From IMG/VR virus record IMGVR_UViG_3300043449_002710, positions 1 through 64,000 of that record: a stretch of DNA of 64,000 nt; one strand, given 5' to 3'. A model generated the notes under the pieces. The model was not told the DNA's origin and searched no databases. It was given only the letters and a program-made list of their open reading frames with translations. Shown here piece by piece: positions 36,172-59,835 of the stretch. Position 1 is the stretch's first letter; the number at the start of each line of letters is the position of its first letter. The position numbers and the translations under genes were made by a program.

Positions 36172-37572
36172 ATGAAGCGCTCCAAGAAACTGTACGTTGC
36201 CAGAAGAAGCTCCTCCGTATTAAGTCGATTCATGCTCTCCCCGCGCAAACGCTTCGTGCGGTCTTCTTTGTACGAGGGCTTTCCTACCTTAGCTGAAGTG
36301 ATCTTGGCCCGTAATGTTGCCAATACAACAGAGATTGAAAAGTTTCTGAATGACTTCCACGTGGAAGACTTGCCCAACTTGAATGAGTGGCTCGATTCCA
36401 CCATGCGCAAATACCTGATCAATAAATATGACAGAACCCGAGGTTATACCCCTAAGGCTTCTGACCCAGATTGGATGCAAGGCAAGACGGATCTTGAAAC
36501 GGTCATCTTGGACAACGCGCTCACGGATAAGCTTCAGCATTTAGTAGATTTTTTAAAGAACAAAATGACCACTGAACCTAACTTCAACCTCAAGTCTTTC
36601 CAGGCCGAAGAGGCCATGAAGCAATCTCAAGAATGGCTCGATCGACTCAAAAAGAAAAAGAGCGAAGAAGAGCAAGAGGGTGTGGATTACAAAGTCCTGA
36701 TGGACTTAGGCAACGGCTGGAAGTGGGTGGATCTGATTTCTCAGAACGCCTTAACCCGCGAAGGTCAGAAAATGGGCCATTGCGTAGGCGGTTATTGGGA
36801 TCGGGTCAAAACCGGAAGAGAAAAGATCTTCTCACTCAGGGATTCTGATAACCAACCTCATGCCACTATCGAATACGTCCCAGGCCAAGCTTCCATCGAT
36901 CAGATCAAAGGCAAACAGAACAAAGGCGTGATCCAAGAGTACATGCCTTATGTTTTGGCGTTCTTGAAGTCCCCGCCTGTCAAAGTCAAAAAGATCAACG
37001 ATTACGAATTGAACTTAAACGGTCTTTTGAAAACCAATGATGGATACATTTCAGTCAGTTTGATTCCAGAAGGAACCATCTTAGATCAGAACTTGGATCT
37101 CAAGAAATTTGATGACATTAAGCTTCCCAAGAATCTCACCATCAAAGGCGATCTCATTGTTCCATCGGGTCAGGAATCCTTGCCTGAAAACTTAACTGTC
37201 ACGGGCACTTTGAACTTGGCAAAAACTCTGATTCGAGAACTCCCCACGGGCATGAAAGTGGGCTCTTTGAATCTCTTTGGCTTGAGCAGGCTGACTTCCT
37301 TGCCCGCAGACATTCAGATCACCAAGGATCTCAACGCAGAGTTCTCAGGTTTGGAGTCGATCCCGCCTCTGAAATTAAAAGGCGATCTCGTTTTAAGTGA
37401 CACAGATATTCAGTCTCTCCCAGAAGGTTTGAGCGTGGGTGGCGAACTCGATATCATGAACACCGCGATCAAGACTCTGCCTAAGAAGTTGAAAGTAGGA
37501 ACCGCCATCTTCGTGGATGACGTGGATGCTTTTGAAGGGGTTTCACCAGCTCTGAAAGCGCTTTTACACTAA
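36172..37572 (+). CDS. PcfJ-like domain plus leucine-rich-repeat-like protein
   Basis: EGQKMGHCVG...IFSLRD...PHATIE...QIKGKQN, followed by LPxxLxVxGxLxL repeats. Confidence 0.85.
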   Translation: MKRSKKLYVARRSSSVLSRFMLSPRKRFVRSSLYEGFPTLAEVILARNVANTTEIEKFLNDFHVEDLPNLNEWLDSTMRKYLINKYDRTRGYTPKASDPDWMQGKTDLETVILDNALTDKLQHLVDFLKNKMTTEPNFNLKSFQAEEAMKQSQEWLDRLKKKKSEEEQEGVDYKVLMDLGNGWKWVDLISQNALTREGQKMGHCVGGYWDRVKTGREKIFSLRDSDNQPHATIEYVPGQASIDQIKGKQNKGVIQEYMPYVLAFLKSPPVKVKKINDYELNLNGLLKTNDGYISVSLIPEGTILDQNLDLKKFDDIKLPKNLTIKGDLIVPSGQESLPENLTVTGTLNLAKTLIRELPTGMKVGSLNLFGLSRLTSLPADIQITKDLNAEFSGLESIPPLKLKGDLVLSDTDIQSLPEGLSVGGELDIMNTAIKTLPKKLKVGTAIFVDDVDAFEGVSPALKALLH

Positions 37573-37581
37573 GGGGGACTT

Positions 37582-38943
37582 GTGGAAGATATCAAACTTT
37601 CCGATGTCCAGAAAAACGAGATCGTTAAGCTCCTGAACGAGCGATACGCGAGAACAGCTCCGGAATACGCCCGCCCGAGACACGAGGATTTTAAATTTGG
37701 CAATAAAGCCAAAGAAAAATTCAAAGGCAAGATTCGAACTTTTCTTTCCAAAGCAAAGAGTTTGCCTGCCCCAAAAGAGGAAAGTGAAGATTCCCAACTG
37801 AGCTTGCTTCCGGCAGCTACACCGATCGAGATTTACTCTTCCTTGGAACATCTGCTTGGCCCAGAAAAGATGGGGAAATTTGTGGGCTCTTTTGTTCACT
37901 CTGAGATCAAAGATAGTCCTGAGCCTGAAGAAAATACTTTTTTCACAATCGAAGGCCCCAATGAAAAAGAAATTTACATGAGCGTTGCGGGTTGGGACTT
38001 GAGTACAGTCTCTGAGATTACAACAGATCACCCCGAGACCAAATACGGCAATTTTTTAGACTACATTTCCGATGAAGACCGAAACGATATCGTTTCTAAA
38101 CTCGATTTTGATGCTGAGTGGAAACAGTACAGTGATAAAAGCGGGTACGCGCTTCATGTCAAGGCCCCTCTTACTAAAGGCTATTTGACCTATTCTTTTA
38201 ATCTTCCAGAGTTTATTGACGCTGCCAAGAAACGATTGGCAAGAGAGCAGTCTACTCAAGATATCGACAGAGACGAACTGATTGAAAAGATCGCTGAAAT
38301 CATCGATCGCTACGCCGAGCAGGAATCGGAATACCAAAAATCAGACGAAGCTAGGCTAGAAGACGCGGATAATTACCCAGCCGAAGATGCTGCTAATAAT
38401 AGCCTGCCGGAGATGAAAAGAAATTTAGATGACGAGATTGTCGAGTATATCGATAAGCTCGAATCCTTTGGCGTGGATGAAGACGATATCAAAGAGGCTT
38501 TGATCGATTCTGGTGAAAATGAAGTGACTGGAATTTATCGAGTCGATAATGCGATTGGCTCTTATTCTTGTCGCAGTGAAGATCAAATCGATTGGAGCGA
38601 CCATAGGACTCCAGAGGACTGGTTAAAAGAAGCGGGCCTCCCCTATACTGAAAGCCTCAATGACAACATCGCTCTTCTTGATGACGACGAAGTCGAGAAA
38701 TTAAAAAAATCTTTGAGAGAATGCAGCGCTCGCATCGAGTGGGATAACTCTTTGGACGGGTACAGTCTCAGGTATGTCGATATCTGGTTGGGAGATAACG
38801 ACTCCGTTTCTCTGATTGTAGATCCGCAGAAATTCATCTCTAAAGCCAAGAGAATGATCAAAGATAAAAAGCTTGAGAAAAAGGCCGATACTTCTTACTC
38901 AACTCTTTCGAAAATTTTAGGTAATAACTATGGCTCTCACTAG
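37582..38943 (+). CDS. acidic hypothetical protein, paralogue of the next gene
   Basis: Shared blocks with 38930..40810 (SLLPAA.P.EIYSSLE.LLGPEKMG, KLDF.AEWKQY.DKSGYALH, VDPQ.FISKAKR). Confidence 0.85.
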   Translation: MEDIKLSDVQKNEIVKLLNERYARTAPEYARPRHEDFKFGNKAKEKFKGKIRTFLSKAKSLPAPKEESEDSQLSLLPAATPIEIYSSLEHLLGPEKMGKFVGSFVHSEIKDSPEPEENTFFTIEGPNEKEIYMSVAGWDLSTVSEITTDHPETKYGNFLDYISDEDRNDIVSKLDFDAEWKQYSDKSGYALHVKAPLTKGYLTYSFNLPEFIDAAKKRLAREQSTQDIDRDELIEKIAEIIDRYAEQESEYQKSDEARLEDADNYPAEDAANNSLPEMKRNLDDEIVEYIDKLESFGVDEDDIKEALIDSGENEVTGIYRVDNAIGSYSCRSEDQIDWSDHRTPEDWLKEAGLPYTESLNDNIALLDDDEVEKLKKSLRECSARIEWDNSLDGYSLRYVDIWLGDNDSVSLIVDPQKFISKAKRMIKDKKLEKKADTSYSTLSKILGNNYGSH

Positions 38944-40810
38944 AAAACAAAAACAAGAAGTGATTGATACTCTCAATAAGAAGTACAAAAAGGAAGCCAA
39001 AGACGAGAGACAAGTTTCTTTTATTGATTTTAATATCGACAAAGAAAACAGTAAATTCAAAGGTAAGATTAAGTCTTTTTTGTCCAAGCTTCCTTCGTTA
39101 CCACCTGCGCCCAGCGAAGAATCACAGCAGAGTCTGCTTCCGGCAGCAGCTCCCCTTGAGATCTACTCTTCTTTGGAGTCCCTTCTGGGCCCAGAAAAAA
39201 TGGGAGCTTTTGTTGGTGGTTTTGTTCAGAGACAGGTTGAGAACAAGATACCCAAAGATGACCAGAATGTTTTCTTCACTATTGAAAGCCCAAAAGAAAA
39301 AGAAATTACAGTACCGCTTTACGGTTGGGAATTGAGCTGGCTGGAAAATGCGCCTACTAATTACACTAAAGATTTTTTAAAAACCATTTCTGCCTCCGAC
39401 AGAAAAGATATTATCTCTAAGCTCGATTTTGCTGCGGAATGGAAACAATACGGTGACAAAAGTGGCTATGCACTACACACGAAAATTTCCACTGCAAAAG
39501 CCTACTTGGTTTACACTTTCCAATTGCCTGAGTTTTTAGAAGCCGCCAAAAAAAGGCTTGCTCGTGAAAATTTTGAATTGGGAATGGACAGAGAAGATCT
39601 CGTCGAAAAACTTGCTGAAGTCCTCGATGCTTATGCTGAAAAAGAGCATGAATATTATTCTTCTGACGACTATCTTTTAGAGTCCGCTGACGAATATCCA
39701 GCAGAAGATGCTAGGAACGAAGATTTTGAAATAGTCAAAAAAGAACTAGATGAAGAAATTATCGACTATATCGATCAGCTTGAATCCATAGGTATGGAGG
39801 AAGATGACATCGTCGAGATGCTCATCGATTCTGGGGAATATGAAGTCGCTAGCTATTACACCGTGGATAACGAGATCGGTTCCTACATCGCTTCGAGCGA
39901 TCACCAAATAGATGACTTGGATTGGTCGATGCAGGGTTTTGAGCCTTTTAAAAACTCAGGATTGCCTTACACGGATAAAATCAACGACAATGTTCATCTT
40001 CTAACTGAAGAAGAGGCTAAGGAACTCAAACACGCTGTCAGTGAATGTCACCTGTATGTGCAATGGTCGAATGAGGCGGATGGCTACGAAATTAGGTATA
40101 TGACCGTCTACACTTCAGACAATGACCGCGTGGTCTTAGTAGTCGATCCCCAGACTTTCATTTCGAAAGCCAAACGAAAAATCAAAGACAGAAAACTAGA
40201 AGTAAACCAGAAAAAAATCGGCAAGAAAAAGGCCGCAAGCTTAGAGGGTGAGAAGATGAAAAAGTATTCGGCTTTGTCGAAGGTTCTGGCTTCCAAGGTT
40301 CAAGCAGATGCCGACATCATGAAAAAGACGGAAAACCTTCCGCCTGTGGCCAAGCGCGAGATGATTGCCACCCTCTATGAAGCCATCGCACGAAATGTCC
40401 TCCCCATGGATGAAAATAGAATCCAGTGGATGGTTCACTACATTCACAACAACATGAGCGACAACGAGATCAACTCGGAATGGGAGTTCATCCGTAAGGG
40501 CCATGTTCAAAAGCTTGTGAAGCTCTTCAAACAGCTTGAAGCCCCGGGCATGATGGAAAAGCACGCCGACAAAATGTTAGACCTGCAAAGGCTTCATCAG
40601 GAGATCTCCGAAGGCATCATGCGGACCAAGGAAGCTGGCTCAGAAGTCGATCCCAAGACCTTTGATGCAATCGAAAAGATTGTCATAGACTTCGCTGATG
40701 ACTTCGCTGATGAAATCGCTGGTAAGAAAAAGCTTCCTGGAGGAAAGAAACAAACTCTTCTTAAAGGCTATTCGGCTCTTTCTAAGGTATTAGATAAGAA
40801 GGGCAACTAA
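38930..40810 (+). CDS. acidic hypothetical protein (paralogue of the previous gene) fused to an extra C-terminal domain
   Basis: Paralogy as above; possible internal start at 40256 (GAGGGTG..ATG, MKKYSALSKVLAS). Confidence 0.85.
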   Translation: MALTRKQKQEVIDTLNKKYKKEAKDERQVSFIDFNIDKENSKFKGKIKSFLSKLPSLPPAPSEESQQSLLPAAAPLEIYSSLESLLGPEKMGAFVGGFVQRQVENKIPKDDQNVFFTIESPKEKEITVPLYGWELSWLENAPTNYTKDFLKTISASDRKDIISKLDFAAEWKQYGDKSGYALHTKISTAKAYLVYTFQLPEFLEAAKKRLARENFELGMDREDLVEKLAEVLDAYAEKEHEYYSSDDYLLESADEYPAEDARNEDFEIVKKELDEEIIDYIDQLESIGMEEDDIVEMLIDSGEYEVASYYTVDNEIGSYIASSDHQIDDLDWSMQGFEPFKNSGLPYTDKINDNVHLLTEEEAKELKHAVSECHLYVQWSNEADGYEIRYMTVYTSDNDRVVLVVDPQTFISKAKRKIKDRKLEVNQKKIGKKKAASLEGEKMKKYSALSKVLASKVQADADIMKKTENLPPVAKREMIATLYEAIARNVLPMDENRIQWMVHYIHNNMSDNEINSEWEFIRKGHVQKLVKLFKQLEAPGMMEKHADKMLDLQRLHQEISEGIMRTKEAGSEVDPKTFDAIEKIVIDFADDFADEIAGKKKLPGGKKQTLLKGYSALSKVLDKKGN

Positions 40811-40811
40811 T

Positions 40812-40985
40812 ATGAAACAAAAATACCCTGCTTTAGCAAAAGTTTTAGCCCAGGCTTCTATTGAGATAGACGGCAAGCCCTACTCTCTTGAGCAGTTAAA
40901 TGCGATGGATGAGATTGAAGTAAGGGGAGTTTTCGTTTGCCTTCTTGGAAACCCCCAGGTTAAATCGGCTCCCCATGCCACCTAA
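40812..40985 (+). CDS. 57-aa ORF beginning with the shared tag (MKQKYPALAKVLAQAS); possibly truncated
   Basis: Below the ORF-track cutoff; translated manually. AAGGG RBS. Confidence 0.65.
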   Translation: MKQKYPALAKVLAQASIEIDGKPYSLEQLNAMDEIEVRGVFVCLLGNPQVKSAPHAT

Positions 40986-43900
40986 TAAACTGTATCTAAA
41001 ACCGCTTGGAGGTTTGCCCTTTAGCTGCCAAGCCAAGAGCTGCCCCAAGAAGCAAGACTCTTATGATCTCAGACTCTTTCGAGATGCGAACCTGAACTTT
41101 GATACTTTCAAGCCTCAGGGCTGCATGGAATATAAAACTCATGTCGTCGGGGCATGGACCCAGGTTTTATCCCAAGACGAATGGGAGCAGGCCCCTCTGA
41201 TTGGCTGCATCTTGCCTTGCCCAGATGCTACCGGAGCACAAGGCTCAGCGGGGGGTTTCGGCGCTGGCAAAGACATTCTGATCGATGCTTTAGTGCGCGA
41301 GTTCAATCAGCCTGTTCGGATCGCTTTTTTCTTTCTCACGCGAGGCTATAGCTTCAGCAAAGCCACCCGAGGGGATATTGTTCAACAGCCTGTGAACAAG
41401 GCCGCTATCTCCAACTGCTACCCTTATCTTTTGAATGACTTGGAAAAGCTCAAGCCTACGAAGCTTTTGCTCTGTGGGCAGGAAGCATGTGAAACCTTTT
41501 TCAAAGGTTCCGTCGATGTGCCCACCTTGAGAAGAAAAAAGGGACTCTCGGTTCGGATTGGAAACAAGAGTTATCCCATTCAAGTCACCTACTCTCCGCA
41601 TTACGCCATCATGATGCCTGTTTACATCCAGTCGATCCGAGAGGATGCGGGCAAGCTTGCAGGCAAGGGCTATACTTTTCAAGGCGGCAGCGCACGAATC
41701 CTAAAGACCTTAGATGAAACCTTAGATTACTTGGATTTCTTATCCGAGCACGAAGGGTTCATCGCGTTTGACACCGAGACTGAAAACCTCAACCGCAAGG
41801 CCCCAAACAAATTGGGAACCTTGCAGTTTGCCACCGACGATCAGCTTGGGGTGGTTTTGCCCTATCAGCACAAAGAAACACCGTTTGGTCCAGATGAGCT
41901 GGTGCTGATCAAAAAAAGGCTCAGCCTTCTTTTTTCAAAAAAGATCAAAGCCGCAGGCTGGGTGATCCACAACGCCAAATTCGAACACACCGTGTGTAAG
42001 AACCACTTCGGAACGTTCGTGGATTCAGCTCCGGTCTTTGACACGCAAGCCATGGCGTTTCTTTTGGACGAGACTAGATCTGAAAGGAAGATGGACATCC
42101 CCAAGGGCACTCGCGGGATCTATTCTTTAAAAGCCCTCTCACGCGATTACTTAGGCTTCTCTGGCTACGACCAAGGAGTTCTCCAAGCGCGAGAAGAAGG
42201 CACCTTGATGGATCTCACCTTGGATAACTTGGCTGACTATGGGTGCTTTACAAAAGGAAATAAGGTCTTATTAGCTGGAGGTAGAGTCAAAGACATTTCC
42301 GAAGTTAAAGTTGGGGATTTAGTAGTCACACATAAAAATAGATTAAGAAAAGTGGTAAAAACTTGGGTGAAACCATACCAAGGAAAACTTTATAATCTCT
42401 ATTTTAAAAATGGGTTTAGTATTGAGGGGGTTACTCCAAACCACCCCATTTTAGTGCAAACAGAATCTGGGCAGAAATGGTCTCGTGTGGATGAATTAAA
42501 CTTAGGATGCTTGTGTTTTAAACAAGGGGACAACACACAAATTCCCCAAAAAGAGGCTTGGTTAGAAATTCTAAATACAGCTAAGAATATTTTAATTGAA
42601 GAAAATAAACAAAAAAGTGCCCGCGCCAGATCCCAATCCTGTAGCGCAGATCAAATAGATGCCCTAGCTTCACACTTTGAACATCCCGATTTTTGGTGGT
42701 TTTTGGGGCTATGTTTGGCAGAGGGTTCCGTAAGGCACAAGCTGCGGGGCGGCCTTAGGGTCGCCGCAGCTTTGAGCCTAGCTTTACATCAAAAAGAATT
42801 AGAAGAGGCTAAGAAAATAATAGGCGAAATTTTCCCAGGCATACATCTCTCTATAGTGGGAAGAAAAAATAACCTGGGAGTTGAAATCGTTATTTGCAAT
42901 AGGGCTTTAGCTATAGTTTTTGACGTTTTATTACAGACAATGAATAAAGTAGAAAAAAAAGCATCTACTATAGTACATCTTCATCCCAGTCTTTTTTATT
43001 CGTTATCCAAAGGCCAAGCTTGCGAGGTGTTGAGTGGATACTTTGACGGAGATGGTCACTTCAAAATAACGACCCAAGATGCTATCCAAGCTATTTCTAA
43101 CACTACAAGTATAAACCTATCAACTCAGTTACAATTATTACTTCAAAAGGTGGATTCGCACTACACTAAGAAAACTATTTTTCATGGAACCAAATACGGG
43201 AAATGCAAAGCCCAAAAAAATACCAGCTATTGGCTTACAATATTTGGGGGATCTTGTTTCTGGTGGAATTCTCGTTTTGATAAAATCAAAAAAAAGCCAA
43301 GCGCTTTACTCGCAAAAAAACATAGTCCTTATTTAGAACTCGACTACATTGAAACTTGCGAGGCTGATACCGAAGTTTATAATTGCGAAGTTGAAGAAGA
43401 TAACTCTTACGTCTGTAACGGGATTCGCGTACACAATTCCATGGATGCCTATGTGACTTTTGCCCTGTACGAAAGAATTCAAGAATTGGCCTCCGAGCAA
43501 GGCTACCTCAAGCAGCTTATGAAGCTCACGGAGCATTACTATAGTCCTGCTATTCGCTTGATTGCTCTTGTCGAGATGACGGGCTTTAAAACCGATCTCA
43601 AACAGCTCAGGCTATTGGCTAGCCGCAGAGGGCCCCTTGAAACCAAGATCATGGCTTTGGAAGAAAAGATGAAAGCCATGCCCGCTTTCCAAGAAGCCAA
43701 CTTAAAAGCAGTCAAAAGAAGGAACGCCAACCATACGATGGGCGCTCGCGGCAACGTCCCTTGGGTCTTTGACTTCGCCAAAGACGAGGACAAAAAGACC
43801 GTGTTCTTTAACGTGTTAGGCTTAGAGCCTGTGAGCTTTTCAGAAAAAACCGGGCAGCCTGCCATCGATGACGAGTTCTTCGAAGAGTACAGCGAGGAGA

Positions 43901-45039
43901 ACCCCGAGGTCGCGGCTTACGCGGAGTACACTGAAGCCAAAAAGATGCGCGACACATTTATCAGCAAAATGCTTGAGCGCGTCGATCCTGAGACGGGCGA
44001 CCCCGACTGCAAGCTGGATCAAAGAATTAGGTCCAATATCTGGTACGCAAGGCTTGTGACCGGGCGCTGGGCGATGACTGAGCCCAATATGCACGCCATC
44101 CCAAAAGCCGAGGAAGGCGGTTCTGAAACAGACTTCTTGGTCAGAAAATCCGTCAAAGACATCTTCACCGTCGATCCTGGCTATGCGCTGATGCAAGTGG
44201 ATTACAAGGTCAACGAAGTGAGGTGGGCTGGGATTTTATCTCAAGACAAGGCGTTGGCTAAGATCTTCAACGATGCCGATTTGCTGATGAAAGAAGCAAG
44301 ACTGTCTGAAGATCCCGCAAGATTGAAGGACGCTGCCTTCAAAGAAGACATCCATAGAAACACAGCGAGTGAAACTTTCGGAGTGCCTTTGAGTCAGGTC
44401 TCAAAAGCGCAGAGACAAGCGAGCAAAAGTATTACTTTCGGAATTATGTTCCAAAGCTCGGCTAACTCGATTGCGACTTCCCTTGGGATCGAGCTGCAGC
44501 AAGCCGAGGAGTACATCAAAAAGTTCTTCAATAAGATGTCGGGAGTGGACTCTTGGATCAAACGGATCAAGTTTTTTGCCGCTCAAAATGGGTATGTGGA
44601 AACTCCAACCGGAAGACGGCGCAGGTTTTGGTCTTACGAGCTGCCTGAATCCTATAGAAATAAAAGATCCCACACCGCTCGGAACGATCGGCAATCGGTG
44701 AATGCCCCAATTCAAGGCATCGCCAACGATGGCAGTATGCTGGGCGGGGCCTGCTCGCTGCATGACTACATTGAAGCGCACCAGAAGGACTGGAAGATTC
44801 AGAATCTGGTTCATGACTCTTGCTTGATTCAAATGCCGATTGAAGACGTAGCCGATGCGATTTTAGCCATGGAATCCATCTTTGTGGATCAGGCAATGAG
44901 AAGGCTTGAGAAGCTTGGGGTTCAATTCAACCTGCCTTTGGCTATTGATGTCGAAGTGGGCTTTAACTGGGGCAGCTTGAATAAGTGGTCAGGCACCCGA
45001 TCTCACGCCTTTGAGTTACAACAGTCTCTCCGCAAATAG
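40975..45039 (+). CDS. polA: family A DNA polymerase with a UDG-like N-domain, 3'-5' exonuclease and intein
   Basis: ExoI FDTET, ExoII HNAKFE, ExoIII Y...D split by the intein; TGRW...PN; motif A DYKVNE; motif B RQASKSITFG; motif C VHDS. Likely start is ATG 40975. Confidence 0.93.
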   Translation: MPPNKLYLKPLGGLPFSCQAKSCPKKQDSYDLRLFRDANLNFDTFKPQGCMEYKTHVVGAWTQVLSQDEWEQAPLIGCILPCPDATGAQGSAGGFGAGKDILIDALVREFNQPVRIAFFFLTRGYSFSKATRGDIVQQPVNKAAISNCYPYLLNDLEKLKPTKLLLCGQEACETFFKGSVDVPTLRRKKGLSVRIGNKSYPIQVTYSPHYAIMMPVYIQSIREDAGKLAGKGYTFQGGSARILKTLDETLDYLDFLSEHEGFIAFDTETENLNRKAPNKLGTLQFATDDQLGVVLPYQHKETPFGPDELVLIKKRLSLLFSKKIKAAGWVIHNAKFEHTVCKNHFGTFVDSAPVFDTQAMAFLLDETRSERKMDIPKGTRGIYSLKALSRDYLGFSGYDQGVLQAREEGTLMDLTLDNLADYGCFTKGNKVLLAGGRVKDISEVKVGDLVVTHKNRLRKVVKTWVKPYQGKLYNLYFKNGFSIEGVTPNHPILVQTESGQKWSRVDELNLGCLCFKQGDNTQIPQKEAWLEILNTAKNILIEENKQKSARARSQSCSADQIDALASHFEHPDFWWFLGLCLAEGSVRHKLRGGLRVAAALSLALHQKELEEAKKIIGEIFPGIHLSIVGRKNNLGVEIVICNRALAIVFDVLLQTMNKVEKKASTIVHLHPSLFYSLSKGQACEVLSGYFDGDGHFKITTQDAIQAISNTTSINLSTQLQLLLQKVDSHYTKKTIFHGTKYGKCKAQKNTSYWLTIFGGSCFWWNSRFDKIKKKPSALLAKKHSPYLELDYIETCEADTEVYNCEVEEDNSYVCNGIRVHNSMDAYVTFALYERIQELASEQGYLKQLMKLTEHYYSPAIRLIALVEMTGFKTDLKQLRLLASRRGPLETKIMALEEKMKAMPAFQEANLKAVKRRNANHTMGARGNVPWVFDFAKDEDKKTVFFNVLGLEPVSFSEKTGQPAIDDEFFEEYSEENPEVAAYAEYTEAKKMRDTFISKMLERVDPETGDPDCKLDQRIRSNIWYARLVTGRWAMTEPNMHAIPKAEEGGSETDFLVRKSVKDIFTVDPGYALMQVDYKVNEVRWAGILSQDKALAKIFNDADLLMKEARLSEDPARLKDAAFKEDIHRNTASETFGVPLSQVSKAQRQASKSITFGIMFQSSANSIATSLGIELQQAEEYIKKFFNKMSGVDSWIKRIKFFAAQNGYVETPTGRRRRFWSYELPESYRNKRSHTARNDRQSVNAPIQGIANDGSMLGGACSLHDYIEAHQKDWKIQNLVHDSCLIQMPIEDVADAILAMESIFVDQAMRRLEKLGVQFNLPLAIDVEVGFNWGSLNKWSGTRSHAFELQQSLRK
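42244..43437 (+). mobile_element. intein (398 aa) with a LAGLIDADG homing endonuclease
   Basis: Starts CFTKG, has block B VTPNHP, LAGLIDADG-like LGLCLAEG and LSGYFDGDG, and ends VHN|S. More AT-rich than the flanks. Confidence 0.93.
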
Positions 45040-45124: not shown

Positions 45125-45676
45125 ATGCGCAAAACTAGGTTGATGGAAATTGCTGAGCGTTATGGGGATCACGGGGCTGGGGCTTTAAATCCAAGAACCA
45201 TCGACGCGGTGGTGTATCAGATCACCGAACTTGGAGAGCAGGCTTTTGGGCCCAAGTTCACCGAAGCCTTGGAAGAAGACATTTCACTAACTGAAGCAAG
45301 CTACCCTAAGAGCAAAGCTTTGGAGTTTCTCGCTTCAGCTTTTGTTCAAAAGTATGTCTCTCAGGCTTTGAATCGAAATCAGATCGAATTGGGCCAGAGG
45401 GTAGGGAATCTTCCGCCTCTGACTCGCGATACCTACGTCGATTACTTCATGGCGCTCACGACTTTGGAGCGGGCTACCTTCAGGACCCCCCTTCAGAACA
45501 CCGCAGTCAATGTCCAGGCTGTCTTGGCGGGCTACTCCACCGAGACGAGCTACCCTGTTTGTGAAGGAATTGTGAAGTTCTTCAAAGACACCAAAAACCA
45601 AGTGGGCCTTTACCTTCTGATCAAGGCGCTTTGCGAAAAGATCAAACGCGAGTCCAAACCTCATGACCACGAGTAA
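45125..45676 (+). CDS. hypothetical protein
   Basis: Clean ORF with a GGAG RBS. Confidence 0.7.
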   Translation: MRKTRLMEIAERYGDHGAGALNPRTIDAVVYQITELGEQAFGPKFTEALEEDISLTEASYPKSKALEFLASAFVQKYVSQALNRNQIELGQRVGNLPPLTRDTYVDYFMALTTLERATFRTPLQNTAVNVQAVLAGYSTETSYPVCEGIVKFFKDTKNQVGLYLLIKALCEKIKRESKPHDHE

Positions 45677-46629: not shown

Positions 46630-47037
46630 TTACATCAAGCTTTTAGCCTGCTCGGTTTTTAAGAACTCCAGAAGCTTTTCGAGGGAACCTTCAAAAAGAA
46701 GGTCGTCTGTCATCATTCCTTCGGAGTCTAAGGCGTAGGCTTCAAACCTGTCGGGCCAAACGTAAACAAGCAGCCTGCCTTTAGTGGCAGAAGCCGTCTC
46801 GTCGTTGGCCCAAGAAGTATCGGTGAACCCTAAATCGACCAGCTCTTGTGGGAACAAGATATGCGAGTGTTCCTTGAAAGGCACTCCCTTAGAAGCCTGA
46901 ACGCCCTTGCACCAATTGGAGTGCATGTCACTCCCAGTGGAGGTTGCCCCACAGTCGCATTGTCCCTTTGGGACAGACTTATTGATGTAACTCAGCACCT
47001 GAGAGAGCTTTGGGAATTTCTTTGAGTTTAATTTCAC
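46630..47037 (-). CDS. hypothetical protein with the N-terminal tag FPKLSQVL
   Basis: GGGGAG RBS and GTG start. Confidence 0.7.
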   Translation of the reverse strand: MKLNSKKFPKLSQVLSYINKSVPKGQCDCGATSTGSDMHSNWCKGVQASKGVPFKEHSHILFPQELVDLGFTDTSWANDETASATKGRLLVYVWPDRFEAYALDSEGMMTDDLLFEGSLEKLLEFLKTEQAKSLM

Positions 47038-47065
47038 AGCTTAATCTCCCCGGCAACGTTACAGA

Positions 47066-48860: not shown

Positions 48861-49334
48861 ATGAAACTAAAAAAATATCCAACAGTTACTAAAATTTTAG
48901 CTTCAAAGGGGGGCGCTAGAAAAATTTTGGTAATGGATTTTCTTCGAGACCACGCTAAGCATTTTGGGTTTTTACCCATGGAAGTTGAAATCGATGGGGA
49001 AATATTATCTTGGGATGATTGGCAGGCTTTATTAACGGAGCAAGACCACCAGGAATTGGATCAAATCGAAGCCGCTGCTAAAAATAAAAGAATAGACTGG
49101 TCAAATAAATTAAGCGGAGAAAAGAAAAAAGGTTATATTGATTTACACGACGAAAAGGGAACACCGATTTATAAGTCATCCGTTCCCATTGGTGGACATA
49201 AAAAAGAAATGCACGAAGCTGGACAGAAGTGGTTTAAAAAACTGTCTAAAAAAGAGCAACAAGAATATATTGAATTACACCCACATTCAAGATATAGAAC
49301 ACAAGCCTCCACTTCCGGTTTCCCAAACGACTAG
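48861..49334 (+). CDS. hypothetical protein with the N-terminal tag YPTVTKILAS
   Basis: GAGG RBS before ATG 48861; C-terminal WF..LS.KEQQEYI..HP.S motif. Confidence 0.75.
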   Translation: MKLKKYPTVTKILASKGGARKILVMDFLRDHAKHFGFLPMEVEIDGEILSWDDWQALLTEQDHQELDQIEAAAKNKRIDWSNKLSGEKKKGYIDLHDEKGTPIYKSSVPIGGHKKEMHEAGQKWFKKLSKKEQQEYIELHPHSRYRTQASTSGFPND

Positions 49335-49338: not shown

Positions 49339-49791
49339 TTAATATTGCCCCAAGAACCGAGAGATTTCTTTTTTCAGAGTTTCCTCAATCGCAGGGATCG
49401 GAACTTGAATCGTGAGTTGGATCGTGAACTCAATCGACGCATCGGTTAAACCAGCTAAGCTTGCGGGCTCTTCGTAATCAATAGAGACATCCACTTTCAC
49501 TGAAGAAAACCCTTGGGAAAACTTTTCACCCAGGGACTCACTCAGCTCTTTTTTGATCTTCTTTTCTTCCGCGTATTTAAAGCTATCAATCGCTAGGATC
49601 TGATCTTCCTCGCTCAAATCCGAGATGTCTTGGTCAAATGCCTTGCTCAAATTCACGTGGCTTTTTTTGTAAGTGACATCGAGAACAATGCTCTCGTCGT
49701 CTTCGTGAAGCCTTAAAGACGGGCTAAAAAAAGTATCGAGATCTTTTTCTGGGAAAGCAGAAAGGATGGTTTCACTTAGCGGATAGCGCAT
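49339..49791 (-). CDS. acidic hypothetical protein (variant tag MRYPLSETILSA)
   Basis: ORF with a TTATTATT motif upstream. Confidence 0.7.
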   Translation of the reverse strand: MRYPLSETILSAFPEKDLDTFFSPSLRLHEDDESIVLDVTYKKSHVNLSKAFDQDISDLSEEDQILAIDSFKYAEEKKIKKELSESLGEKFSQGFSSVKVDVSIDYEEPASLAGLTDASIEFTIQLTIQVPIPAIEETLKKEISRFLGQY

Positions 49792-51231: not shown

Positions 51232-51786
51232 CTAGCCGACAGAAATACCGGCGTTTGTGACGGAGAAAAGAAAGTCTGGTTTTACCCCAAGCTTTTCCTG
51301 GGTCCAGATCCAAGGCTGACTGCCGCCTGAGATCACCCAGATCGCAGCTCCATGCGGCGAGCGTACCCAGCGCCGCACGTAGTGGGTTAAAGCATCGTCT
51401 TGAGTATGAGCGCCTAAAAGGATGTAAAGATCTTTCACTTTCTCAGGGTCCTTGGGAATGCTTTCTTGGGGAGAGACAAATTCAAAGCGGGTAAATCCGT
51501 TTTTGTGATGGTGCTTTAAAAGTTCACACACGCATTGCAATGCCCATTGATCTGTCGGGGAAGAATGAAACAAGGCAAAGTGCTGATTCTCGGGTGGGGT
51601 TTTTTGAAACTCGTCGTGCATCTTGCGCTGAACCCCAACGGATAAAACCCCTTTGGATACTTTTTCACTTTTGAAATCCAATTTCTCAGACGGGGTTTTC
51701 AAAAACTGTACTGGCATTCCCGTCAGGTACAAGACCTTCAAATGCGTAGGCAATTTATGAAATTGAGTATCCTTGCGCGGAATCAT
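51232..51786 (-). CDS. hypothetical protein
   Basis: ORF in the helicase operon. Confidence 0.7.
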   Translation of the reverse strand: MIPRKDTQFHKLPTHLKVLYLTGMPVQFLKTPSEKLDFKSEKVSKGVLSVGVQRKMHDEFQKTPPENQHFALFHSSPTDQWALQCVCELLKHHHKNGFTRFEFVSPQESIPKDPEKVKDLYILLGAHTQDDALTHYVRRWVRSPHGAAIWVISGGSQPWIWTQEKLGVKPDFLFSVTNAGISVG

Positions 51787-53902: not shown

Positions 53903-53909
53903 GAACTAC

Positions 53910-55847
53910 CTACTTGGTTGGATTCGAGCTGGTTTGGCGATCCTTTACCGCACAAGATTGAATAATGACACCGCTGGTATCTGGGTTGCCCGTTTTATCT
54001 GGTCTTTCATAAATCGCGTTGTACGAGATGGGCATCGCCTCGCCACCAGCAATCGTTTGGTACTCGATTTTGCTGTTCTTTAAAAGAGGTGTTTTAACGC
54101 AGTTCAAACTCACTGAAATTGCAGGACTTTGATCATAGCTTGGCAAAGAAAGTCTGACCGAAGTGATTCTCCCCACCCGGTTTTTTTCTTGATGTAATAA
54201 AGGGCGGTTGGGGCGAAGGTAGGGCCGATAGGTAAACGTCATGGAGAGTTTATTCGCATCGGCTAATCGTTTTGAGAACTCAATGGCGCTGATCTTCTCT
54301 AAGGCTTGCAAATTGGCCACACCTGTAAAAGTCTGGTTAGCTAATTTGACCCCATATTTGCTCGCAAGTACGTTGGAATAAACTACGGCCCGAACAGGAA
54401 GATCGTAGGTGAGTTGCCCCAAAACAGCTTGGGCTTGGGCGGCTTGGGCAAAGGGTTTCATCATTTCGCCTTGAACCAAAGAAGGAGAAAGACTCTGCGA
54501 CTCTAAGCCTGAGATGACCTCGCCTTCTTCTTCAGAGATCATGTCGCTTTCTAGGTGCTTTTCCACGGTATAAACCGTGTTATGTCCACCGAAGTTTTCT
54601 GGGAGAAAATCATACATGGGAAATTCAAAAATGATATCCCCGTTCCCAGTGACACTCCATTCGTAATCAATCTGCTGGCAGACCTTTGAGATCAAACTGA
54701 ACCGATCCGTCCAATCGGGGGTCGCCATGATGTTGTTCAAGCCCTCAAAACTTGTTCGGATCATGCCAGAGATTTGAAGACCCGAGGCAGGGATGAGAAA
54801 GTGCATCTGTCCGTGTAACGGAGAATGTTTATCCTGCCAGAACGAATTCTCCCCGATAGAGACGCATTCTTTTTTAGTCCAGAAATCACTCTTGGTTCCA
54901 AACAAACAAAGATTATCCCAAGACTCCAAACTGCCGACTTTCCCACTTTCAATCGCTTGAGTGTTCTTTGGGTTGGAATATTTAATAACTTTGCCTGGGC
55001 TGAAAAATCCTGTGCCTTGCCCACCCACCACACCATTGGGACCAGATTTTGATTTTGAGGAGGGGCTTACCCAGTTGTACCGACCCGTGACAATCAGAGA
55101 AACCATATCCACAAAAGAAAACCCAGAGAAGATATGGTCTGTTCCCGCTACACGCTGATTGTTTGTGGGGTAATAATCTTTGAAAAATCCAGCAGCGTCT
55201 GAATCGATAAAGATGGTATTTTTTTTACCACCTTCACTCGTCTGCCACATCGAGTTGTTAAAACCATTCACCGCGATACGCATCCCTGTCATCGTGGCGC
55301 GAATATCGTAACAATGAAGCGAAACCGAACTAGCTCCGGTGACATAGTTGGATGTAACCGGCCTATTTCCGATAGTTCCAGTAAAGGCTGGAATCCAGCG
55401 ATCCGTTGACGGAGAATCATAAGGGTTTTTAATGAAGATCTTTACCGTGTCAAACTTAGAAAAAATACAAGATCCTGGCCCAAACGAGTAGCGTCTCTGA
55501 AAATCTTCCATCGCGCTTTTCGGATCTTTCGAGGACTTATGCCGACTCGTATTATAACGAATGAAAAATTGTTGGGAGAGTTCTTGTTTTCTATTGTAGA
55601 TTTTTAGTTTGGCCTTCTCAGAAAACCTGTCATTTGTGTTTCTGTAGATATTATTGAAATTATCCGAAGTCAAAATCCATTGATTGAACGGATTGGTCAA
55701 AACAATGTCCGCAGATCCAGGCCCGTTTCGATCCGTGTAGGTAATCTCAAGGCTTTGAACCCATGGCGAAATATCCACGCCACAGACAAAAACCATGTAG
55801 TCGTGGTAAAGAACCGTTCTTTGCTGTTCTTTAAAAGAAATAGCCAT
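53910..55847 (-). CDS. putative baseplate hub/tail protein
   Basis: ADIVLTN..., FTG.I, IIFEFPMYD, KYG and RPYLRPNRP motifs fit gpD/gp27-like hubs (inference). Confidence 0.6.
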   Translation of the reverse strand: MAISFKEQQRTVLYHDYMVFVCGVDISPWVQSLEITYTDRNGPGSADIVLTNPFNQWILTSDNFNNIYRNTNDRFSEKAKLKIYNRKQELSQQFFIRYNTSRHKSSKDPKSAMEDFQRRYSFGPGSCIFSKFDTVKIFIKNPYDSPSTDRWIPAFTGTIGNRPVTSNYVTGASSVSLHCYDIRATMTGMRIAVNGFNNSMWQTSEGGKKNTIFIDSDAAGFFKDYYPTNNQRVAGTDHIFSGFSFVDMVSLIVTGRYNWVSPSSKSKSGPNGVVGGQGTGFFSPGKVIKYSNPKNTQAIESGKVGSLESWDNLCLFGTKSDFWTKKECVSIGENSFWQDKHSPLHGQMHFLIPASGLQISGMIRTSFEGLNNIMATPDWTDRFSLISKVCQQIDYEWSVTGNGDIIFEFPMYDFLPENFGGHNTVYTVEKHLESDMISEEEGEVISGLESQSLSPSLVQGEMMKPFAQAAQAQAVLGQLTYDLPVRAVVYSNVLASKYGVKLANQTFTGVANLQALEKISAIEFSKRLADANKLSMTFTYRPYLRPNRPLLHQEKNRVGRITSVRLSLPSYDQSPAISVSLNCVKTPLLKNSKIEYQTIAGGEAMPISYNAIYERPDKTGNPDTSGVIIQSCAVKDRQTSSNPTK

Positions 55848-56527
55848 TAGACATTTGCGACCAGATAATTAAAAAGTTCCTTGGAAAGGATGACTGCTTT
55901 AGGCGAACCGCTCAAGTCATCTAGCGCATAAACACAATGCCGGATGCTTTGACAAACCAGTTCAACAGTCACGCCATCGGCAATCGGCAACCCGGTGTCT
56001 TCTAAAGAGACAACCCCAAGTTGAAGGTCAACGGTGGTGACGGTTAAAGCTCCCCCAGGTTTCCGAGCCGAAACCGATTCGGACGAATCGATTGGGTAGT
56101 TGGCGATGACAGCCCCACCACTTGAAACCTTGGTAGTAACTAAATCGGCAAGTTGGCGTCCTTCTAACCTGAGCTTTTTTTCCACCCCAGTCACTCCCAA
56201 AGAAGGGGCATTGGGGTCAGAGCCCGGGTAATAAGAGAGCCCTGCCACCAAGTGGTAGAGTTCTTCCATCCGCAAAGCGGCTTGAGTGATATCGATGGTC
56301 AAATTGTTGATCAAAACAGGCAACGAAAGAGCCGGATTCAAAGCTCCGAGCATTGCGTTGTAGTGAGACAGGCTCATCAGCTTCATTTCCGCAGAACCTA
56401 CCCACAGTTTCGAGATGTCGTAGATTTTGGTGGGGTTTTTAGCCACATCTCGTACCGCTTTCACTAAGTTGTACGGAATCTTAGCTTCAGATAGAGATAG
56501 TTTCATGGGTTTTTGAATCAAAATCAT
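55847..56527 (-). CDS. putative virion structural protein
   Basis: Between baseplate-like genes; AGGAG RBS and late-type motif. Confidence 0.55.
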   Translation of the reverse strand: MILIQKPMKLSLSEAKIPYNLVKAVRDVAKNPTKIYDISKLWVGSAEMKLMSLSHYNAMLGALNPALSLPVLINNLTIDITQAALRMEELYHLVAGLSYYPGSDPNAPSLGVTGVEKKLRLEGRQLADLVTTKVSSGGAVIANYPIDSSESVSARKPGGALTVTTVDLQLGVVSLEDTGLPIADGVTVELVCQSIRHCVYALDDLSGSPKAVILSKELFNYLVANV

Positions 56528-56554
56528 ACGAGTCTCCTACAGTATAAAATAACT

Positions 56555-57451
56555 TTAAAAGCCATTGGCATTGAAAGCGTTCAGCAAAGTCGCAAAGGAA
56601 TTGGCATTCAACTGCGGCGTCATAGAATAAACCGTGAAATTGGCTGACCACGAGTTCACGGTATTGGGATTGCTTGAGTCATCTAAAAACTGGACCGTGA
56701 CCTGGGGGTCAAAGAAACCCGTGAGTGTGATGGCTGGGAAAATCCTCGACCGATACAAGATATGGATCACGTTGGCTTCACCTTTGGCGGTAAGCTTTGG
56801 CTGATCCACGAGCTGTAGAAACTTATAGAAGTCGCTTAGGCCAGGGGCGATCTTGAGCTGATCTGCTGTCCGATCTTTCCAAAGCTTATCGGGATTGGAG
56901 ACATCATCGACGGTAGGCAAGATGGACCCCGTTTGAAACTGAAAGGTCAGCTTCGGGTCGTCATAATCAGAATTTCGGTATGAGTCGCGGTACACGTGAA
57001 GAACGCTACCTGACTTGTTCTTGGCCTCAGATCCCCTCTGGGAGATGCTCCATTGCACGCTTTTGGGGTTTGTGGACCAGACGATGCTCTTTTCCCCCAA
57101 CGCTTTGCTAGCGTTAATCGTGGTGATTTGATCGGCTGTCGCGTTAAAAAAGTTTATCCCACCGTAATTGGTGATGTCTTCAAAAGTAGCAAAGATCCAA
57201 GGTTCGCGCCTGACATAGTAAGGGCTTCTCGTGCCATTGGAGGCCTCATCCATTAAATTTTTCCTGGCAGTCTTGGCTTCGAGGCTTTCGGCAATCGCCT
57301 CGAATTGCGATTGACCTACATTCACGATCCTAGGCTTCTCAGGGTTGCTCAGGCCGAAGAACGAGGAGATCTCCGAGACTTTCCCCTGGCTGATCATCTT
57401 TTGCCAGTCGCCAGTGGCAACACTTACGTCAAGAGGTTTGGTTTCCGCCAT
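56555..57451 (-). CDS. putative tail-tube initiator/baseplate protein
   Basis: NPKSVQW...LTFQFQTG...LTGFF...WSANFTV pattern typical of tube-like folds. Confidence 0.55.
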   Translation of the reverse strand: MAETKPLDVSVATGDWQKMISQGKVSEISSFFGLSNPEKPRIVNVGQSQFEAIAESLEAKTARKNLMDEASNGTRSPYYVRREPWIFATFEDITNYGGINFFNATADQITTINASKALGEKSIVWSTNPKSVQWSISQRGSEAKNKSGSVLHVYRDSYRNSDYDDPKLTFQFQTGSILPTVDDVSNPDKLWKDRTADQLKIAPGLSDFYKFLQLVDQPKLTAKGEANVIHILYRSRIFPAITLTGFFDPQVTVQFLDDSSNPNTVNSWSANFTVYSMTPQLNANSFATLLNAFNANGF

Positions 57452-57748: not shown

Positions 57749-57760
57749 TTTAAGGTTTTG

Positions 57761-57790
57761 AGGTGCGGGGGCTTTTAGGCCCCCGTGCTC
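57761..57790. terminator. hairpin between convergent genes
   Basis: GCGGGGGC-TTTTAG-GCCCCCGT. Confidence 0.65.
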
Positions 57791-59476: not shown

Positions 59477-59499
59477 AGAAATTAATTTGACGCTATGAG

Positions 59500-59835
59500 C
59501 TAAGTTCGTAAGACCTTGGAAACGGTCGGGTATTCTTCTAAGGATGACTTAGTGGCGTGCGGTAGTTTATTGCGTAACCGTTCTGGGATTTTTTTGAGAA
59601 CATCCCAGTCACGTAAAGTGAAGGCTTGAAAAAGAGTCAGCAGCGTATAGATATCTTCTCCTTTCACTTCTGTTTTAGGTAAGACTTTTTTAAGATCGTC
59701 TTCTAAGGCTTTCAAAAAATTAGGATATCTTTCGCCTTCACTACTTAATTTGTCGTTAAAAATTTCTTTAAAATTGGGCTCTTTAGCGTTGGCTAGGGCG
59801 TATTCGACCAAGTTTTTAAGCTTCTGTATATTCAT
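59500..59835 (-). CDS. hypothetical protein with the C-terminal tag YPTVSKVL
   Basis: ORF carrying the tag motif. Confidence 0.7.
   Translation of the reverse strand: MNIQKLKNLVEYALANAKEPNFKEIFNDKLSSEGERYPNFLKALEDDLKKVLPKTEVKGEDIYTLLTLFQAFTLRDWDVLKKIPERLRNKLPHATKSSLEEYPTVSKVLRT

What the first reader, a model, noticed from the sequence alone, without database searches (positions are those of the whole stretch)
36280..59532. Shared terminal peptide tag [YF][PS]x[LV][SAT][KEQ][VI]L on many unrelated proteins: candidate capsid-targeting signal
Seen in sequence: FPTLAEVIL (~36280, near the N-terminus of the PcfJ-LRR protein), YSTLSKIL (~38896, C-terminus), YSALSKVL twice (~40265 after an internal M, and ~40769 at the C-terminus), YPALAKVL (40824, N-terminus of a 57-aa ORF), FPKLSQVL (N-terminus of 46630..47037), YPTVTKIL (48876, N-terminus) and YPTVSKVL (C-terminus of 59500..59835). 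A variant, YPLSETIL, starts 49339..49791. The proteins are otherwise mostly unrelated, the codons differ, and the tag sits at or near termini, often followed by A-S or A-x-A. Established analogy: T4 internal proteins carry a short capsid-targeting sequence that the prohead protease removes. Inference: a portable amphipathic-helix address label for packaging cargo into the head.
Basis: partly seen in the sequence, partly recalled or inferred. Interest (0 to 1): 0.8.

Follow-up and report, generated by a model that had tools for sequence, protein, structure and literature searches.

The report
Shared docking peptide on jumbo-phage proteins
A short peptide, roughly [K/R]-Y-P-x-(L/V/I)-(S/A/T)-x-(V/I/L)-L, is really shared by a dozen otherwise unrelated accessory proteins of an uncultured freshwater jumbo phage and its relatives, so it looks like a portable address label, but whether the address is the phage head is still unproven.

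Summary
The strict motif occurs 7 times in the six-frame translation, against 0.045 expected, always in real ORFs.

A scoring matrix trained only on other phages' tags recovers the window's copies. It also finds more copies elsewhere in the same 223-kb genome: 17 tags on 15 genes in about 121 kb surveyed. With the tags masked, the carriers fall into about 12 unrelated families.

The tag is conserved across a clade of uncultured jumbo phages. Each lineage has its own flavour, for example YPx[IV]x[AS]LL in one relative. It is absent from 45 loci of more distant phages that have the same protease family.

- YPLSETIL is background.
- FPTLAEVIL is supported by orthologues.
- The 57-aa ORF is a remnant of a tagged LRR gene.
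- Only about half of the tags are terminal.

No recognised replication enzyme, tail protein or giant polyvalent protein carries the tag. That weakens a clamp or replisome reading.

Tagged genes flank, or lie in an operon with, the head-maturation protease in four genomes. The cargo resembles T4 internal proteins. So capsid or prohead targeting is the best guess (about 0.4), with no receptor identified and no cleavage site found.

The parts
36172..37572 (+). PcfJ-like + leucine-rich-repeat protein (466 aa), a tag carrier
   Evidence: Pfam PcfJ, 1.4e-12. The LRR part is modelled with pLDDT above 90. Orthologues in three relatives carry 1-2 tags near the N-terminus.
36280..36306 (+). Tag variant FPTLAEVI(L), residues 37-45 of the PcfJ-LRR protein
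   Evidence: Scores 16.2 bits with the independent matrix. Orthologous tags are YPVVAEII, YPVLADIL and YPILSR.
37582..38943 (+). Fam450a (453 aa): a family of unknown fold with a C-terminal tag
   Evidence: AF2 model with pLDDT 87; no PDB or BFVD fold match. There are 22 representative relatives, and nearly all carry 1-3 tags after KAKRxIKDxKL.
38896..38919 (+). Tag YSTLSKIL, 7 residues from the C-terminus of Fam450a
38930..40810 (+). Fam450b (626 aa): paralogue of Fam450a plus an extra C-terminal domain, with two tags
   Evidence: 52-55% identical to Fam450a. The extra domain and its closing tag are conserved in P0007 and P0009.
40265..40288 (+). Tag YSALSKVL, internal, at the position homologous to the Fam450a C-terminal tag
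40769..40792 (+). Tag YSALSKVL, 5 residues from the C-terminus of Fam450b
40812..40985 (+). 57-aa ORF with an N-terminal tag. It is the N-terminal remnant of a tagged LRR gene, not the start of PolA.
   Evidence: 48% identical over 42 residues (E 3e-9) to the N-terminus of the 286-aa tagged LRR protein at contig 189556-190416. PolA homologues all start at the equivalent of ATG 40972.
40824..40847 (+). Tag YPALAKVL, residues 5-12
   Evidence: 22.2 bits
46630..47037 (-). 135-aa Cys-rich protein with an N-terminal tag. A paralogue (151 aa) lies at contig 190413-190868.
46993..47016 (-). Tag FPKLSQVL, residues 8-15
   Evidence: 12.6 bits
48846..49334 (+). 162-aa orphan protein with an N-terminal tag
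   Evidence: No family hit.
48876..48899 (+). Tag YPTVTKIL, residues 11-18
   Evidence: 21.6 bits
59500..59835 (-). 111-aa protein with a C-terminal tag, the first gene of the helicase/structural block
   Evidence: A 113-aa gene in the corresponding position in L014 (sequence homology not tested) ends in YPALAAVL-KR.
59509..59532 (-). Tag YPTVSKVL, 2 residues from the C-terminus
   Evidence: 22.6 bits

Best explanation
The peptide [K/R]-Y-P-x-(L/V/I)-(S/A/T)-x-(V/I/L)-L is a modular docking helix. The Tyr-Pro starts a short amphipathic helix whose Y1, hydrophobic 4, 7 and 8 and small 5 and 9 form one face. It recruits a diverse, rapidly changing set of accessory proteins to one conserved phage-encoded receptor. 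What is shown: the tag is real, it is portable between unrelated proteins and positions, it is clade-specific, and it drifts in concert within each genome. What is inferred: the receptor most likely lies inside the assembling head (scaffold or core, or the inner capsid surface). Tagged proteins would then be packaged and delivered with the DNA, as T4 internal proteins and Alt are through their capsid-targeting sequence. Unlike T4, the tag here would work from either end or from linkers, in one to three copies, and without obligatory removal.
For: Reality and portability:
- 7 strict hits against 0.045 expected.
- An independent matrix gives 15 hits against 1.3 expected.
- There are 43 tags in 78,000 residues of clade loci, against 1.5 expected in shuffles.
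- There are only 8 hits in 245,000 residues of outgroup loci, and 6 of those are one orthologous position.
- With tags masked, the carriers are unrelated.

Drift in concert within genomes:
- The window phage uses x-K-[VI]-L.
- Relative L011 uses YPx[IV][TN][AS]LL on four different proteins.
- L013 uses x-R-V-L.

Helix: hydrophobic moment 0.41 against 0.27 in shuffles at 100 degrees. The tag is predicted helical with low confidence at the end of Fam450.

Link to the head:
- In the window phage the order is [184-aa tag][286-aa LRR tag][151-aa tag][HNH][head-maturation protease][47-aa tag].
- In L015, L017 and L018 the protease is followed directly, on the same strand, by an 850-900-aa acidic A/E/K-rich protein with tag-like motifs.
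- In L015 and L018 further tagged proteins follow that one.

Cargo type: small orphan ORFs, LRR proteins, PcfJ-LRR, an ART/Tpt1-like enzyme (22.9 bits, below the cut-off) and DUF4160-DUF2442. Non-homologous small tagged ORFs sit at syntenic spots. [quoted passage not shown]

Not on PolA, two helicases, DnaB, the clamp loader, SbcC or the tail-fibre module.
Against: - No receptor was found.
- The one cis-docking test gave only a poor model: the PcfJ-LRR tag region has pLDDT of about 27.
- 29 of 43 tags are C-terminal or internal, unlike the T4 CTS.
- No conserved cleavage motif follows the N-terminal tags.
- The giant polyvalent proteins next door, which the literature predicts to be packaged (PMC5512222), carry no tag.
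- The PcfJ/Fam450/57-aa block runs straight into PolA, and the 111-aa gene runs into a helicase. That suggests co-expression with early or middle genes.
- The protease neighbourhood also holds the clamp loader, so the adjacency does not point only to the head.
- Only 54% of the genome was surveyed, and the capsid, scaffold and portal genes were not located.
Confidence: 0.4

Rival explanations
1. The tag docks onto a non-virion hub inside the infected cell. Candidates are a phage-built assembly, compartment or condensate, or the PcfJ-LRR/Fam450 pair itself. LRR domains are peptide binders, and Fam450 carries 1-3 tags and could be multivalent. The tag would then gather accessory or host-takeover proteins at one site.
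For: - Tags work from any position and in tandem copies, as multivalent linear motifs do.
- PcfJ-LRR and Fam450 are adjacent in three genomes and fused, with tags at the junction, in P0005.
- LRR proteins recur among the carriers.
- Several tagged genes sit in blocks with PolA or helicases.
Against: - There is no sign that the LRR or Fam450 binds the tag: the C-terminal tag in the Fam450 model has low pLDDT, and the PcfJ-LRR model is poor.
- PcfJ-LRR and Fam450 were seen in only 4 of the 9 clade genomes sampled, though the loci are partial.
- It does not explain the tight protease-operon association.
Confidence: 0.3
2. The tag is a clamp- or replisome-interaction peptide, like a PIP box or a beta-clamp-binding motif. 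It would tether proteins to a processivity factor or another replication hub.
For: - The spacing of hydrophobic residues at 1, 4, 7 and 8, with flanking Lys/Arg and terminal placement, resembles a PIP box.
- A clamp loader is encoded within 3-4 kb of tagged genes.
- The window's tags lie among replication genes.
Against: - PolA is untagged: all homologues start at MPPNK.
- Both helicases, DnaB, the clamp loader and SbcC are untagged.
- The consensus does not match Qxx[LIM]xx[FY][FY] or QL[SD]LF.
- No clamp gene was found in 121 kb; the 226-aa candidate looks capsid- or tube-like.
- The carriers are orphan, LRR and ART-like proteins, not DNA enzymes.
Confidence: 0.07
3. The tag is a degron or processing signal. 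A host or phage protease (ClpXP-like, Lon, or a possible PcfJ-associated peptidase) would read it, so that accessory proteins are removed or cut at a set time.
For: - Terminal, exposed, basic-hydrophobic peptides are typical degrons. The lambda O N-terminal ClpX signal (TNTAKIL, from my own knowledge) resembles T-x-[ST]-K-I-L in YPTVTKIL.
- Tags at domain junctions could mark cleavage points.
Against: - The invariant Tyr-Pro and the concerted drift within each phage lineage fit a dedicated receptor better than a general host protease.
- Tandem copies and conservation on long-lived-looking multidomain proteins are not expected of degrons.
- PcfJ has no demonstrated peptidase activity.
Confidence: 0.08
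4. The tag anchors accessory proteins to the outside of the virion (tail, baseplate or capsid decoration). This would resemble the short conserved N-terminal peptides that dock secondary receptor-binding proteins in some Klebsiella and jumbo phages (from my own knowledge).
For: LRR proteins are plausible adhesins. The 111-aa tagged gene heads a block that contains capsid/tube-like and hub-like proteins.
Against: The 20-kb tail-fibre/baseplate module has no tag at all. Most carriers are 47-160-aa orphans or enzymes, not fibre-like proteins.
Confidence: 0.08
5. The tag is a generic membrane-targeting amphipathic helix, or a chance or paralogy artefact.
For: The peptide is a moderately amphipathic, basic helix.
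Against: - Membrane helices do not need an invariant Tyr-Pro or Leu8.
- The enrichment is more than 100-fold over chance.
- The carriers are unrelated once tags are masked.
- Codons differ.
Confidence: 0.03

Closest known systems
T4 capsid-targeting sequence (CTS) of internal proteins IPI-III and Alt
   Same: A short shared peptide is the only common feature of a diverse, fast-evolving set of small accessory proteins plus an NAD-using enzyme. The genes lie near the prohead protease and core genes. The peptide is portable in principle (PMC3012670).
   Different: There is no sequence relationship. The T4 CTS (MKTYQEFIAE, from my own knowledge) is strictly N-terminal and is removed at a gp21 site. 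Here the tags are N-terminal, C-terminal or internal, come in 1-3 copies, and have no cleavage consensus. Packaging is not shown.
Encapsulin cargo-loading peptides and the shared C-terminal capsid-binding helix of phage 80-alpha scaffold and SaPI1 CpmB
   Same: Short terminal peptides dock unrelated proteins onto the inside of an HK97-fold shell. Hitch-hiking by mimicking a scaffold's capsid-binding helix would explain tags on both the scaffold-like acidic proteins and the cargo (own knowledge).
   Different: The consensus differs (encapsulin: a GSL-type extended peptide). No shell partner is identified here, and the scaffold identity of the acidic proteins is only inferred.
Bacterial microcompartment encapsulation peptides
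   Same: Amphipathic helices of about 10-18 residues at either terminus or between domains, joined by a linker, on unrelated enzymes (own knowledge).
   Different: Those have weak sequence conservation, and no shell genes are seen here. This tag has an invariant Tyr-Pro and a tight 8-residue consensus.
PIP box / bacterial clamp-binding motif
   Same: A terminal linear motif with basic flanks and hydrophobic residues at 1, 4, 7 and 8, shared by many proteins.
   Different: The consensus is not met. The polymerase and the other replisome enzymes lack it, and no clamp was found.
Polyvalent-protein / injected-effector systems of phages (Iyer et al. 2017)
   Same: The same genomic neighbourhood: giant NUDIX/ParB/2H/ART-PolyVal proteins lie next to the PcfJ-LRR and Fam450 genes. 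The paper predicts packaging and co-injection of such proteins.
   Different: The polyvalent proteins themselves carry no tag. The paper describes no shared targeting peptide, and a search of it found no mention of PcfJ.

Membership tests
T4-type capsid-targeting sequence | Located at the extreme N-terminus of every cargo protein | tested here: not met
   14 N-terminal, 9 C-terminal and 20 internal tags.
T4-type capsid-targeting sequence | Followed by a prohead-protease cleavage site (L/I-x-E in T4; S/A/G-x-E in phiKZ-like phages) | tested here: not met
   No recurrent x-E site or any other consensus after the tag. Positions +9 and +10 are simply small or acidic.
T4-type capsid-targeting sequence | Sequence similarity to the T4 CTS | tested here: not met
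   The consensus [KR]YPx[LVI][SAT]x[VIL]L is unlike MKTYQEFIAE (own knowledge), apart from an MK.Y start in some copies.
T4-type capsid-targeting sequence | Cargo present inside virions, and the tag sufficient for packaging | not testable with these tools
   The phage is uncultured, and no proteome is available.
T4-type capsid-targeting sequence | The phage encodes a prohead protease or core, with cargo genes nearby | tested here: met
   PHROG head maturation protease, 3.3e-42. Tagged genes flank it or follow it in four genomes.
PIP box / clamp-binding motif | Present on the replicative polymerase and other replisome enzymes | tested here: not met
   PolA starts at MPPNK without a tag. The helicases, DnaB, clamp loader and SbcC are untagged.
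PIP box / clamp-binding motif | Consensus Qxx[LIM]xx[FY][FY] or QL[SD]LF | tested here: not met
   Position 1 is Y/F, position 2 is P, and positions 7-8 are [VIL]L.
PIP box / clamp-binding motif | A sliding clamp is encoded or available | tested here: inconclusive
   A clamp loader is present. No clamp was found in the 121 kb surveyed, and the 226-aa candidate looks capsid- or tube-like.
Encapsulin cargo-loading peptide | A C-terminal GSL-type peptide binding an encapsulin shell encoded next to the cargo | tested here: not met
   The consensus differs. This is a tailed-phage genome with a tail module.
Short linear docking motif (generic) | A short conserved peptide in an exposed or disordered context on unrelated proteins, independent of position | tested here: met
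   (low-pLDDT terminal helix after a K-rich linker).
Short linear docking motif (generic) | A defined binding partner | not testable with these tools
   No multimer prediction was available. The single-chain test on PcfJ-LRR was uninformative.

The most novel reading that the evidence does not exclude
The tag is the address label of a so-far undescribed phage-built body, in a jumbo-phage clade that is not known to form a nucleus. That body could be an internal capsid 'inner body' assembled from multivalent tagged proteins, or an intracellular compartment or condensate. Fam450 and the LRR proteins would be its scaffold, and the orphan ORFs would be exchangeable clients. A single 8-residue peptide would then define a whole organelle-like proteome that can be read straight from sequence.
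Probability: 0.15. Interest if true: 0.85.

Novelty: new variant of a known kind. Interest (0 to 1): 0.62.

Why it matters
If the tag is a cargo-loading or docking signal, the set of delivered or co-localised accessory proteins of a whole clade of uncultured jumbo phages can be listed from sequence alone. That set would include likely host-takeover or counter-defence factors. The rule 'unrelated proteins, one address peptide' would extend beyond T4 to a form that works from either terminus and in tandem copies. An 8-12-residue portable tag would also be a practical handle for loading foreign proteins. The lineage-specific variants offer a natural specificity-swap experiment for finding the receptor.

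Tried and rejected
1. Tag as the N-terminus of PolA through a frameshift. I suspected a +1 shift in a C-run at about 40966-40975. An independent Logan contig is identical over 38800-44800. All PolA homologues start at the equivalent of ATG 40972. Rejected: the 57-aa ORF is a remnant of a tagged LRR gene.

2. Clamp or replisome motif. Rejected as the leading idea once the replisome enzymes proved untagged and no clamp was found.

3. DNA-level repeat. Rejected because the codons differ.

4. YPLSETIL (49339..49791), KLPTHLKVL (51232..51786) and an alternative-frame FSLLSQVL in L008. These score 5.0, 1.5 and 8.6 bits, which is background.

5. Function of Fam450. The AF2 model is good (pLDDT 87), but there is no PDB or BFVD fold neighbour and only weak Atlas leads.

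6. LRR as receptor, through cis-docking in an AF2 model of PcfJ-LRR. The N-terminal 290 residues were poorly modelled, so the test was uninformative.

7. Cultured relatives. There is no megablast or tblastn match for the region or for Fam450 among 50,697 phage records. The PolA of cultured jumbo Erwinia/Dickeya phages is only about 30% identical. There is no protease relative in the GTDB genomes.

8. Identity of the proteins after the protease. There are no PHROG, PDB or Atlas matches.

9. Upstream promoter motifs of the tagged genes. Inspection showed nothing shared.

10. A literature search for a described equivalent. None was found.
Full report
**Source of the window.** The window is the first 64 kb of a 223,260-bp IMG/VR contig, IMGVR_UViG_3300043449_002710, from a freshwater metagenome. 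This is an uncultured jumbo phage. Nothing similar exists among 50,697 deposited phage genomes at the DNA level. An independent Logan assembly of the run that holds it is identical over 38800-44800.

**The observation.**
Shuffled sequence gives 0.045.
- A much looser pattern finds only these seven plus FPTLAEVI in 20,225 residues of called ORFs.
- A matrix built from the seven separates them (27-34 bits) from everything else (7.5 bits or less; shuffles reach at most 13).
- The codons differ, so the conservation is in the peptide.

**Test with an independent matrix.** To avoid circularity I trained a second matrix only on tags from other phages.
- It scores the window's copies at 12.6-22.6 bits and supports FPTLAEVI (16.2 bits). 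It gives 15 hits of 10 bits or more against 1.3 expected.
- YPLSETIL scores 5.0 bits, which is background.
- With tags masked, only Fam450a/b and the 135/151-aa pair are homologous among the first 13 carriers.
- The 57-aa ORF is also an N-terminal fragment of a 286-aa tagged LRR protein.

**What the neighbourhood is.** The region mixes several kinds of gene:
- Replication genes: PolA with an intein, two helicases and, further on, DnaB and a clamp loader.
- A TnpB-like gene and a PfkB kinase.
- Structural-looking genes and many orphans.

I first suspected that the tag on the 57-aa ORF was the real N-terminus of PolA, which would have pointed to a clamp-binding motif. That is wrong. Most of the 27 PolA homologues retrieved begin at the equivalent of MPPNKLYLKPL (ATG 40972), and none of the N-termini listed carries a tag-bearing extension. 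No recognised replication enzyme carries the tag.

**The rest of the genome.** A tag-derived pattern scanned over all of IMG/VR matched only seven stretches; the two confirmed loci both lie on this contig, and the other five were not identified. It led to a second tag cluster near 200 kb. Walking covered contig 1-83,747 and 182,702-219,947, about 121 kb. In all there are 17 tags on 15 genes. Outside the window they are:
- a 184-aa protein (MKKYPTVTKVL);
- a 286-aa LRR protein (KKYPALNRIL);
- a 151-aa protein;
- then an HNH gene and the head-maturation protease (PHROG 3.3e-42), which are untagged;
- a 47-aa ORF (MIHANKYPVVAKAL);
- a 526-aa protein with an ART/Tpt1-like N-terminal domain and two internal tags;
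- 93-aa and 97-aa proteins;
- a 130-aa protein.

The 20-kb tail-fibre/baseplate module at 64-84 kb has none. The giant polyvalent-type proteins (NUDIX, ParB-like, 2H-ligase-like) have none either.

**Relatives.** Fam450 (37582..38943) has one close outside homologue and 22 representative relatives in a profile search. Nearly all carry one to three tags directly after the conserved KAKRxIKDxKL helix, for example YPTVNALL+YPQITALL, FPLLAKVL, YPTIARIV and FPATQKIL+FPATDRVL. One protein is a Fam450-PcfJ-LRR fusion with tags at the N-terminus and at the junction.

Tags on other, unrelated proteins turn up in the contigs of relatives.
- L011 has YPLITSLL+YPVVAEII on the PcfJ-LRR protein, YPAIQAML at the C-terminus of a DUF4160-DUF2442 protein, and YPMLAEVTL on a 69-aa ORF.
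- L013, L014, L015 and L016 also carry them.
- Each genome has its own flavour, shared by its different carriers. That is what a common co-evolving receptor predicts.

**Protease neighbourhoods.** The protease is 65-80% identical across the clade.
- In L015, L017 and L018 it is followed directly, on the same strand, by an 850-900-aa acidic A/E/K-rich protein with tag-like motifs.
- In L015 and L018 further tagged proteins follow that one.
- L019 has a 555-aa protein next to PcfJ with tags at both ends.

**Frequencies and a negative control.** Over all clade loci there are 43 tags of 12 bits or more in 78,432 residues, against 1.5 expected. Fourteen are N-terminal, nine are C-terminal and twenty are internal. 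As a negative control I took 45 loci from phages whose protease is only 27-48% identical. They hold 8 hits in 244,527 residues. Six of those are one orthologous internal position of an actinophage LysM-type protein.

**Nature of the peptide.** The consensus is [KR]-Y-P-[TAV]-[LVI]-[SAT]-x-[VIL]-L-[ASE]. As a helix it is amphipathic (0.41 against 0.27 in shuffles), but not as a strand. In the Fam450 model (pLDDT 87) it is the low-confidence end of the C-terminal helix, after a Lys-rich linker. Fam450 has no fold neighbour in PDB or BFVD.

**Weighing the readings.** A clamp or replisome motif is disfavoured, because the enzymes are untagged, the consensus is not met, and no clamp was found.

Points for the head-targeting reading:
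- the association with the protease operon;
- the scaffold-like acidic multi-tag proteins;
- the T4-like pattern of diverse small proteins that share only a targeting peptide (PMC3012670);
- an ART-like carrier reminiscent of T4 Alt (PMC5512222).

Points against it:
- tags at C-termini and in linkers;
- no cleavage site after the tag;
- untagged polyvalent proteins;
- tagged genes running into PolA or a helicase on the same strand;
- a clamp loader that confounds the protease adjacency.

A non-virion hub, possibly LRR or Fam450, remains a serious rival. The single-chain model of PcfJ-LRR was too poor to test cis-docking. No receptor was identified. Naming one needs multimer prediction or binding experiments.

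**Verdict.** This is a real, clade-specific, portable docking peptide. Capsid or prohead targeting is the best-supported destination (about 0.4) but is unproven.

Noticed in passing
window 40972-45039 (+): The family A DNA polymerase carries a Hint/LAGLIDADG intein at about residues 431-832 of the 40945 ORF, and an N-terminal Cys-rich/UDG-like region. Homologues are intein-free (about 965 aa) or carry one or two inteins (1321-1793 aa).
   Followed up: partly
window 47038-47180 (-) and 47199-48248 (-): Directly after the TnpB-like gene lies the last repeat and C-terminus of an LRR protein (…NRLTSLEGAPKEVGENFYCSHNRKQFTEEDVRKVCNVAGEIKL*). It is homologous to the end of the 286-aa tagged LRR protein at contig 189556-190416. 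The TnpB element appears to have cut a paralogue of a tagged gene. The 57-aa ORF at 40812 is an N-terminal remnant of the same kind of gene.
   Followed up: partly
window 16323-21260 (-) and 23504-30859 (-): Two giant proteins, 1645 and 2451 aa. They have weak matches to ParB-like, GNAT, exonuclease, 2H/RNA-ligase-like and NUDIX domains, that is, 'polyvalent protein' architecture. Relatives have 1082-3105-aa counterparts, one with a faint ART-PolyVal hit. None carries the tag.
   Followed up: partly
window 53910-57451 (-): A conserved 298/226/645/149-aa block sits between two helicase genes. The 226-aa protein has capsid- or tube-like language-model features (score 0.81, a lead only). So structural-looking genes are interleaved with replication genes.
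   Followed up: partly
window 45663-46622 (+): A PfkB-family carbohydrate/nucleoside kinase (1.4e-29) is encoded next to the polymerase.
   Followed up: no
window 8739-11228 (+): An SbcC-like ATPase (PHROG 6.7e-53). In relatives an SbcD-like exonuclease lies beside PolA.
   Followed up: no
L008 about 6541 (-), = contig about 67.2 kb: A strict-pattern match, FSLLSQVL, lies near the end of a 77-codon alternative frame inside a 470-aa gene. It scores 8.6 bits with the clade matrix, so it is probably chance.
   Followed up: partly
L011 16958-17866 and 17950-18558: In the relative L011 the head-maturation protease is followed by a J-domain (DnaJ-like) protein, judged from its sequence (…YRKRASETHPDK…).
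   Followed up: no
L022 4221-5911 (contig 186922-188612): Two adjacent proteins with an SGGxxS PP-loop motif (PAPS-reductase/QueC-like by eye) lie just upstream of the three tagged genes. This may point to DNA or nucleotide modification.
   Followed up: no
L034-L036, L039, L040, L053 (outgroup actinophage-like contigs): A conserved internal YPEL[AS][EQ][VI]L at residue 106 or 119 of a 522-964-aa LysM-related protein resembles the tag. It is a single orthologous position, with no other copies in those loci.
   Followed up: partly
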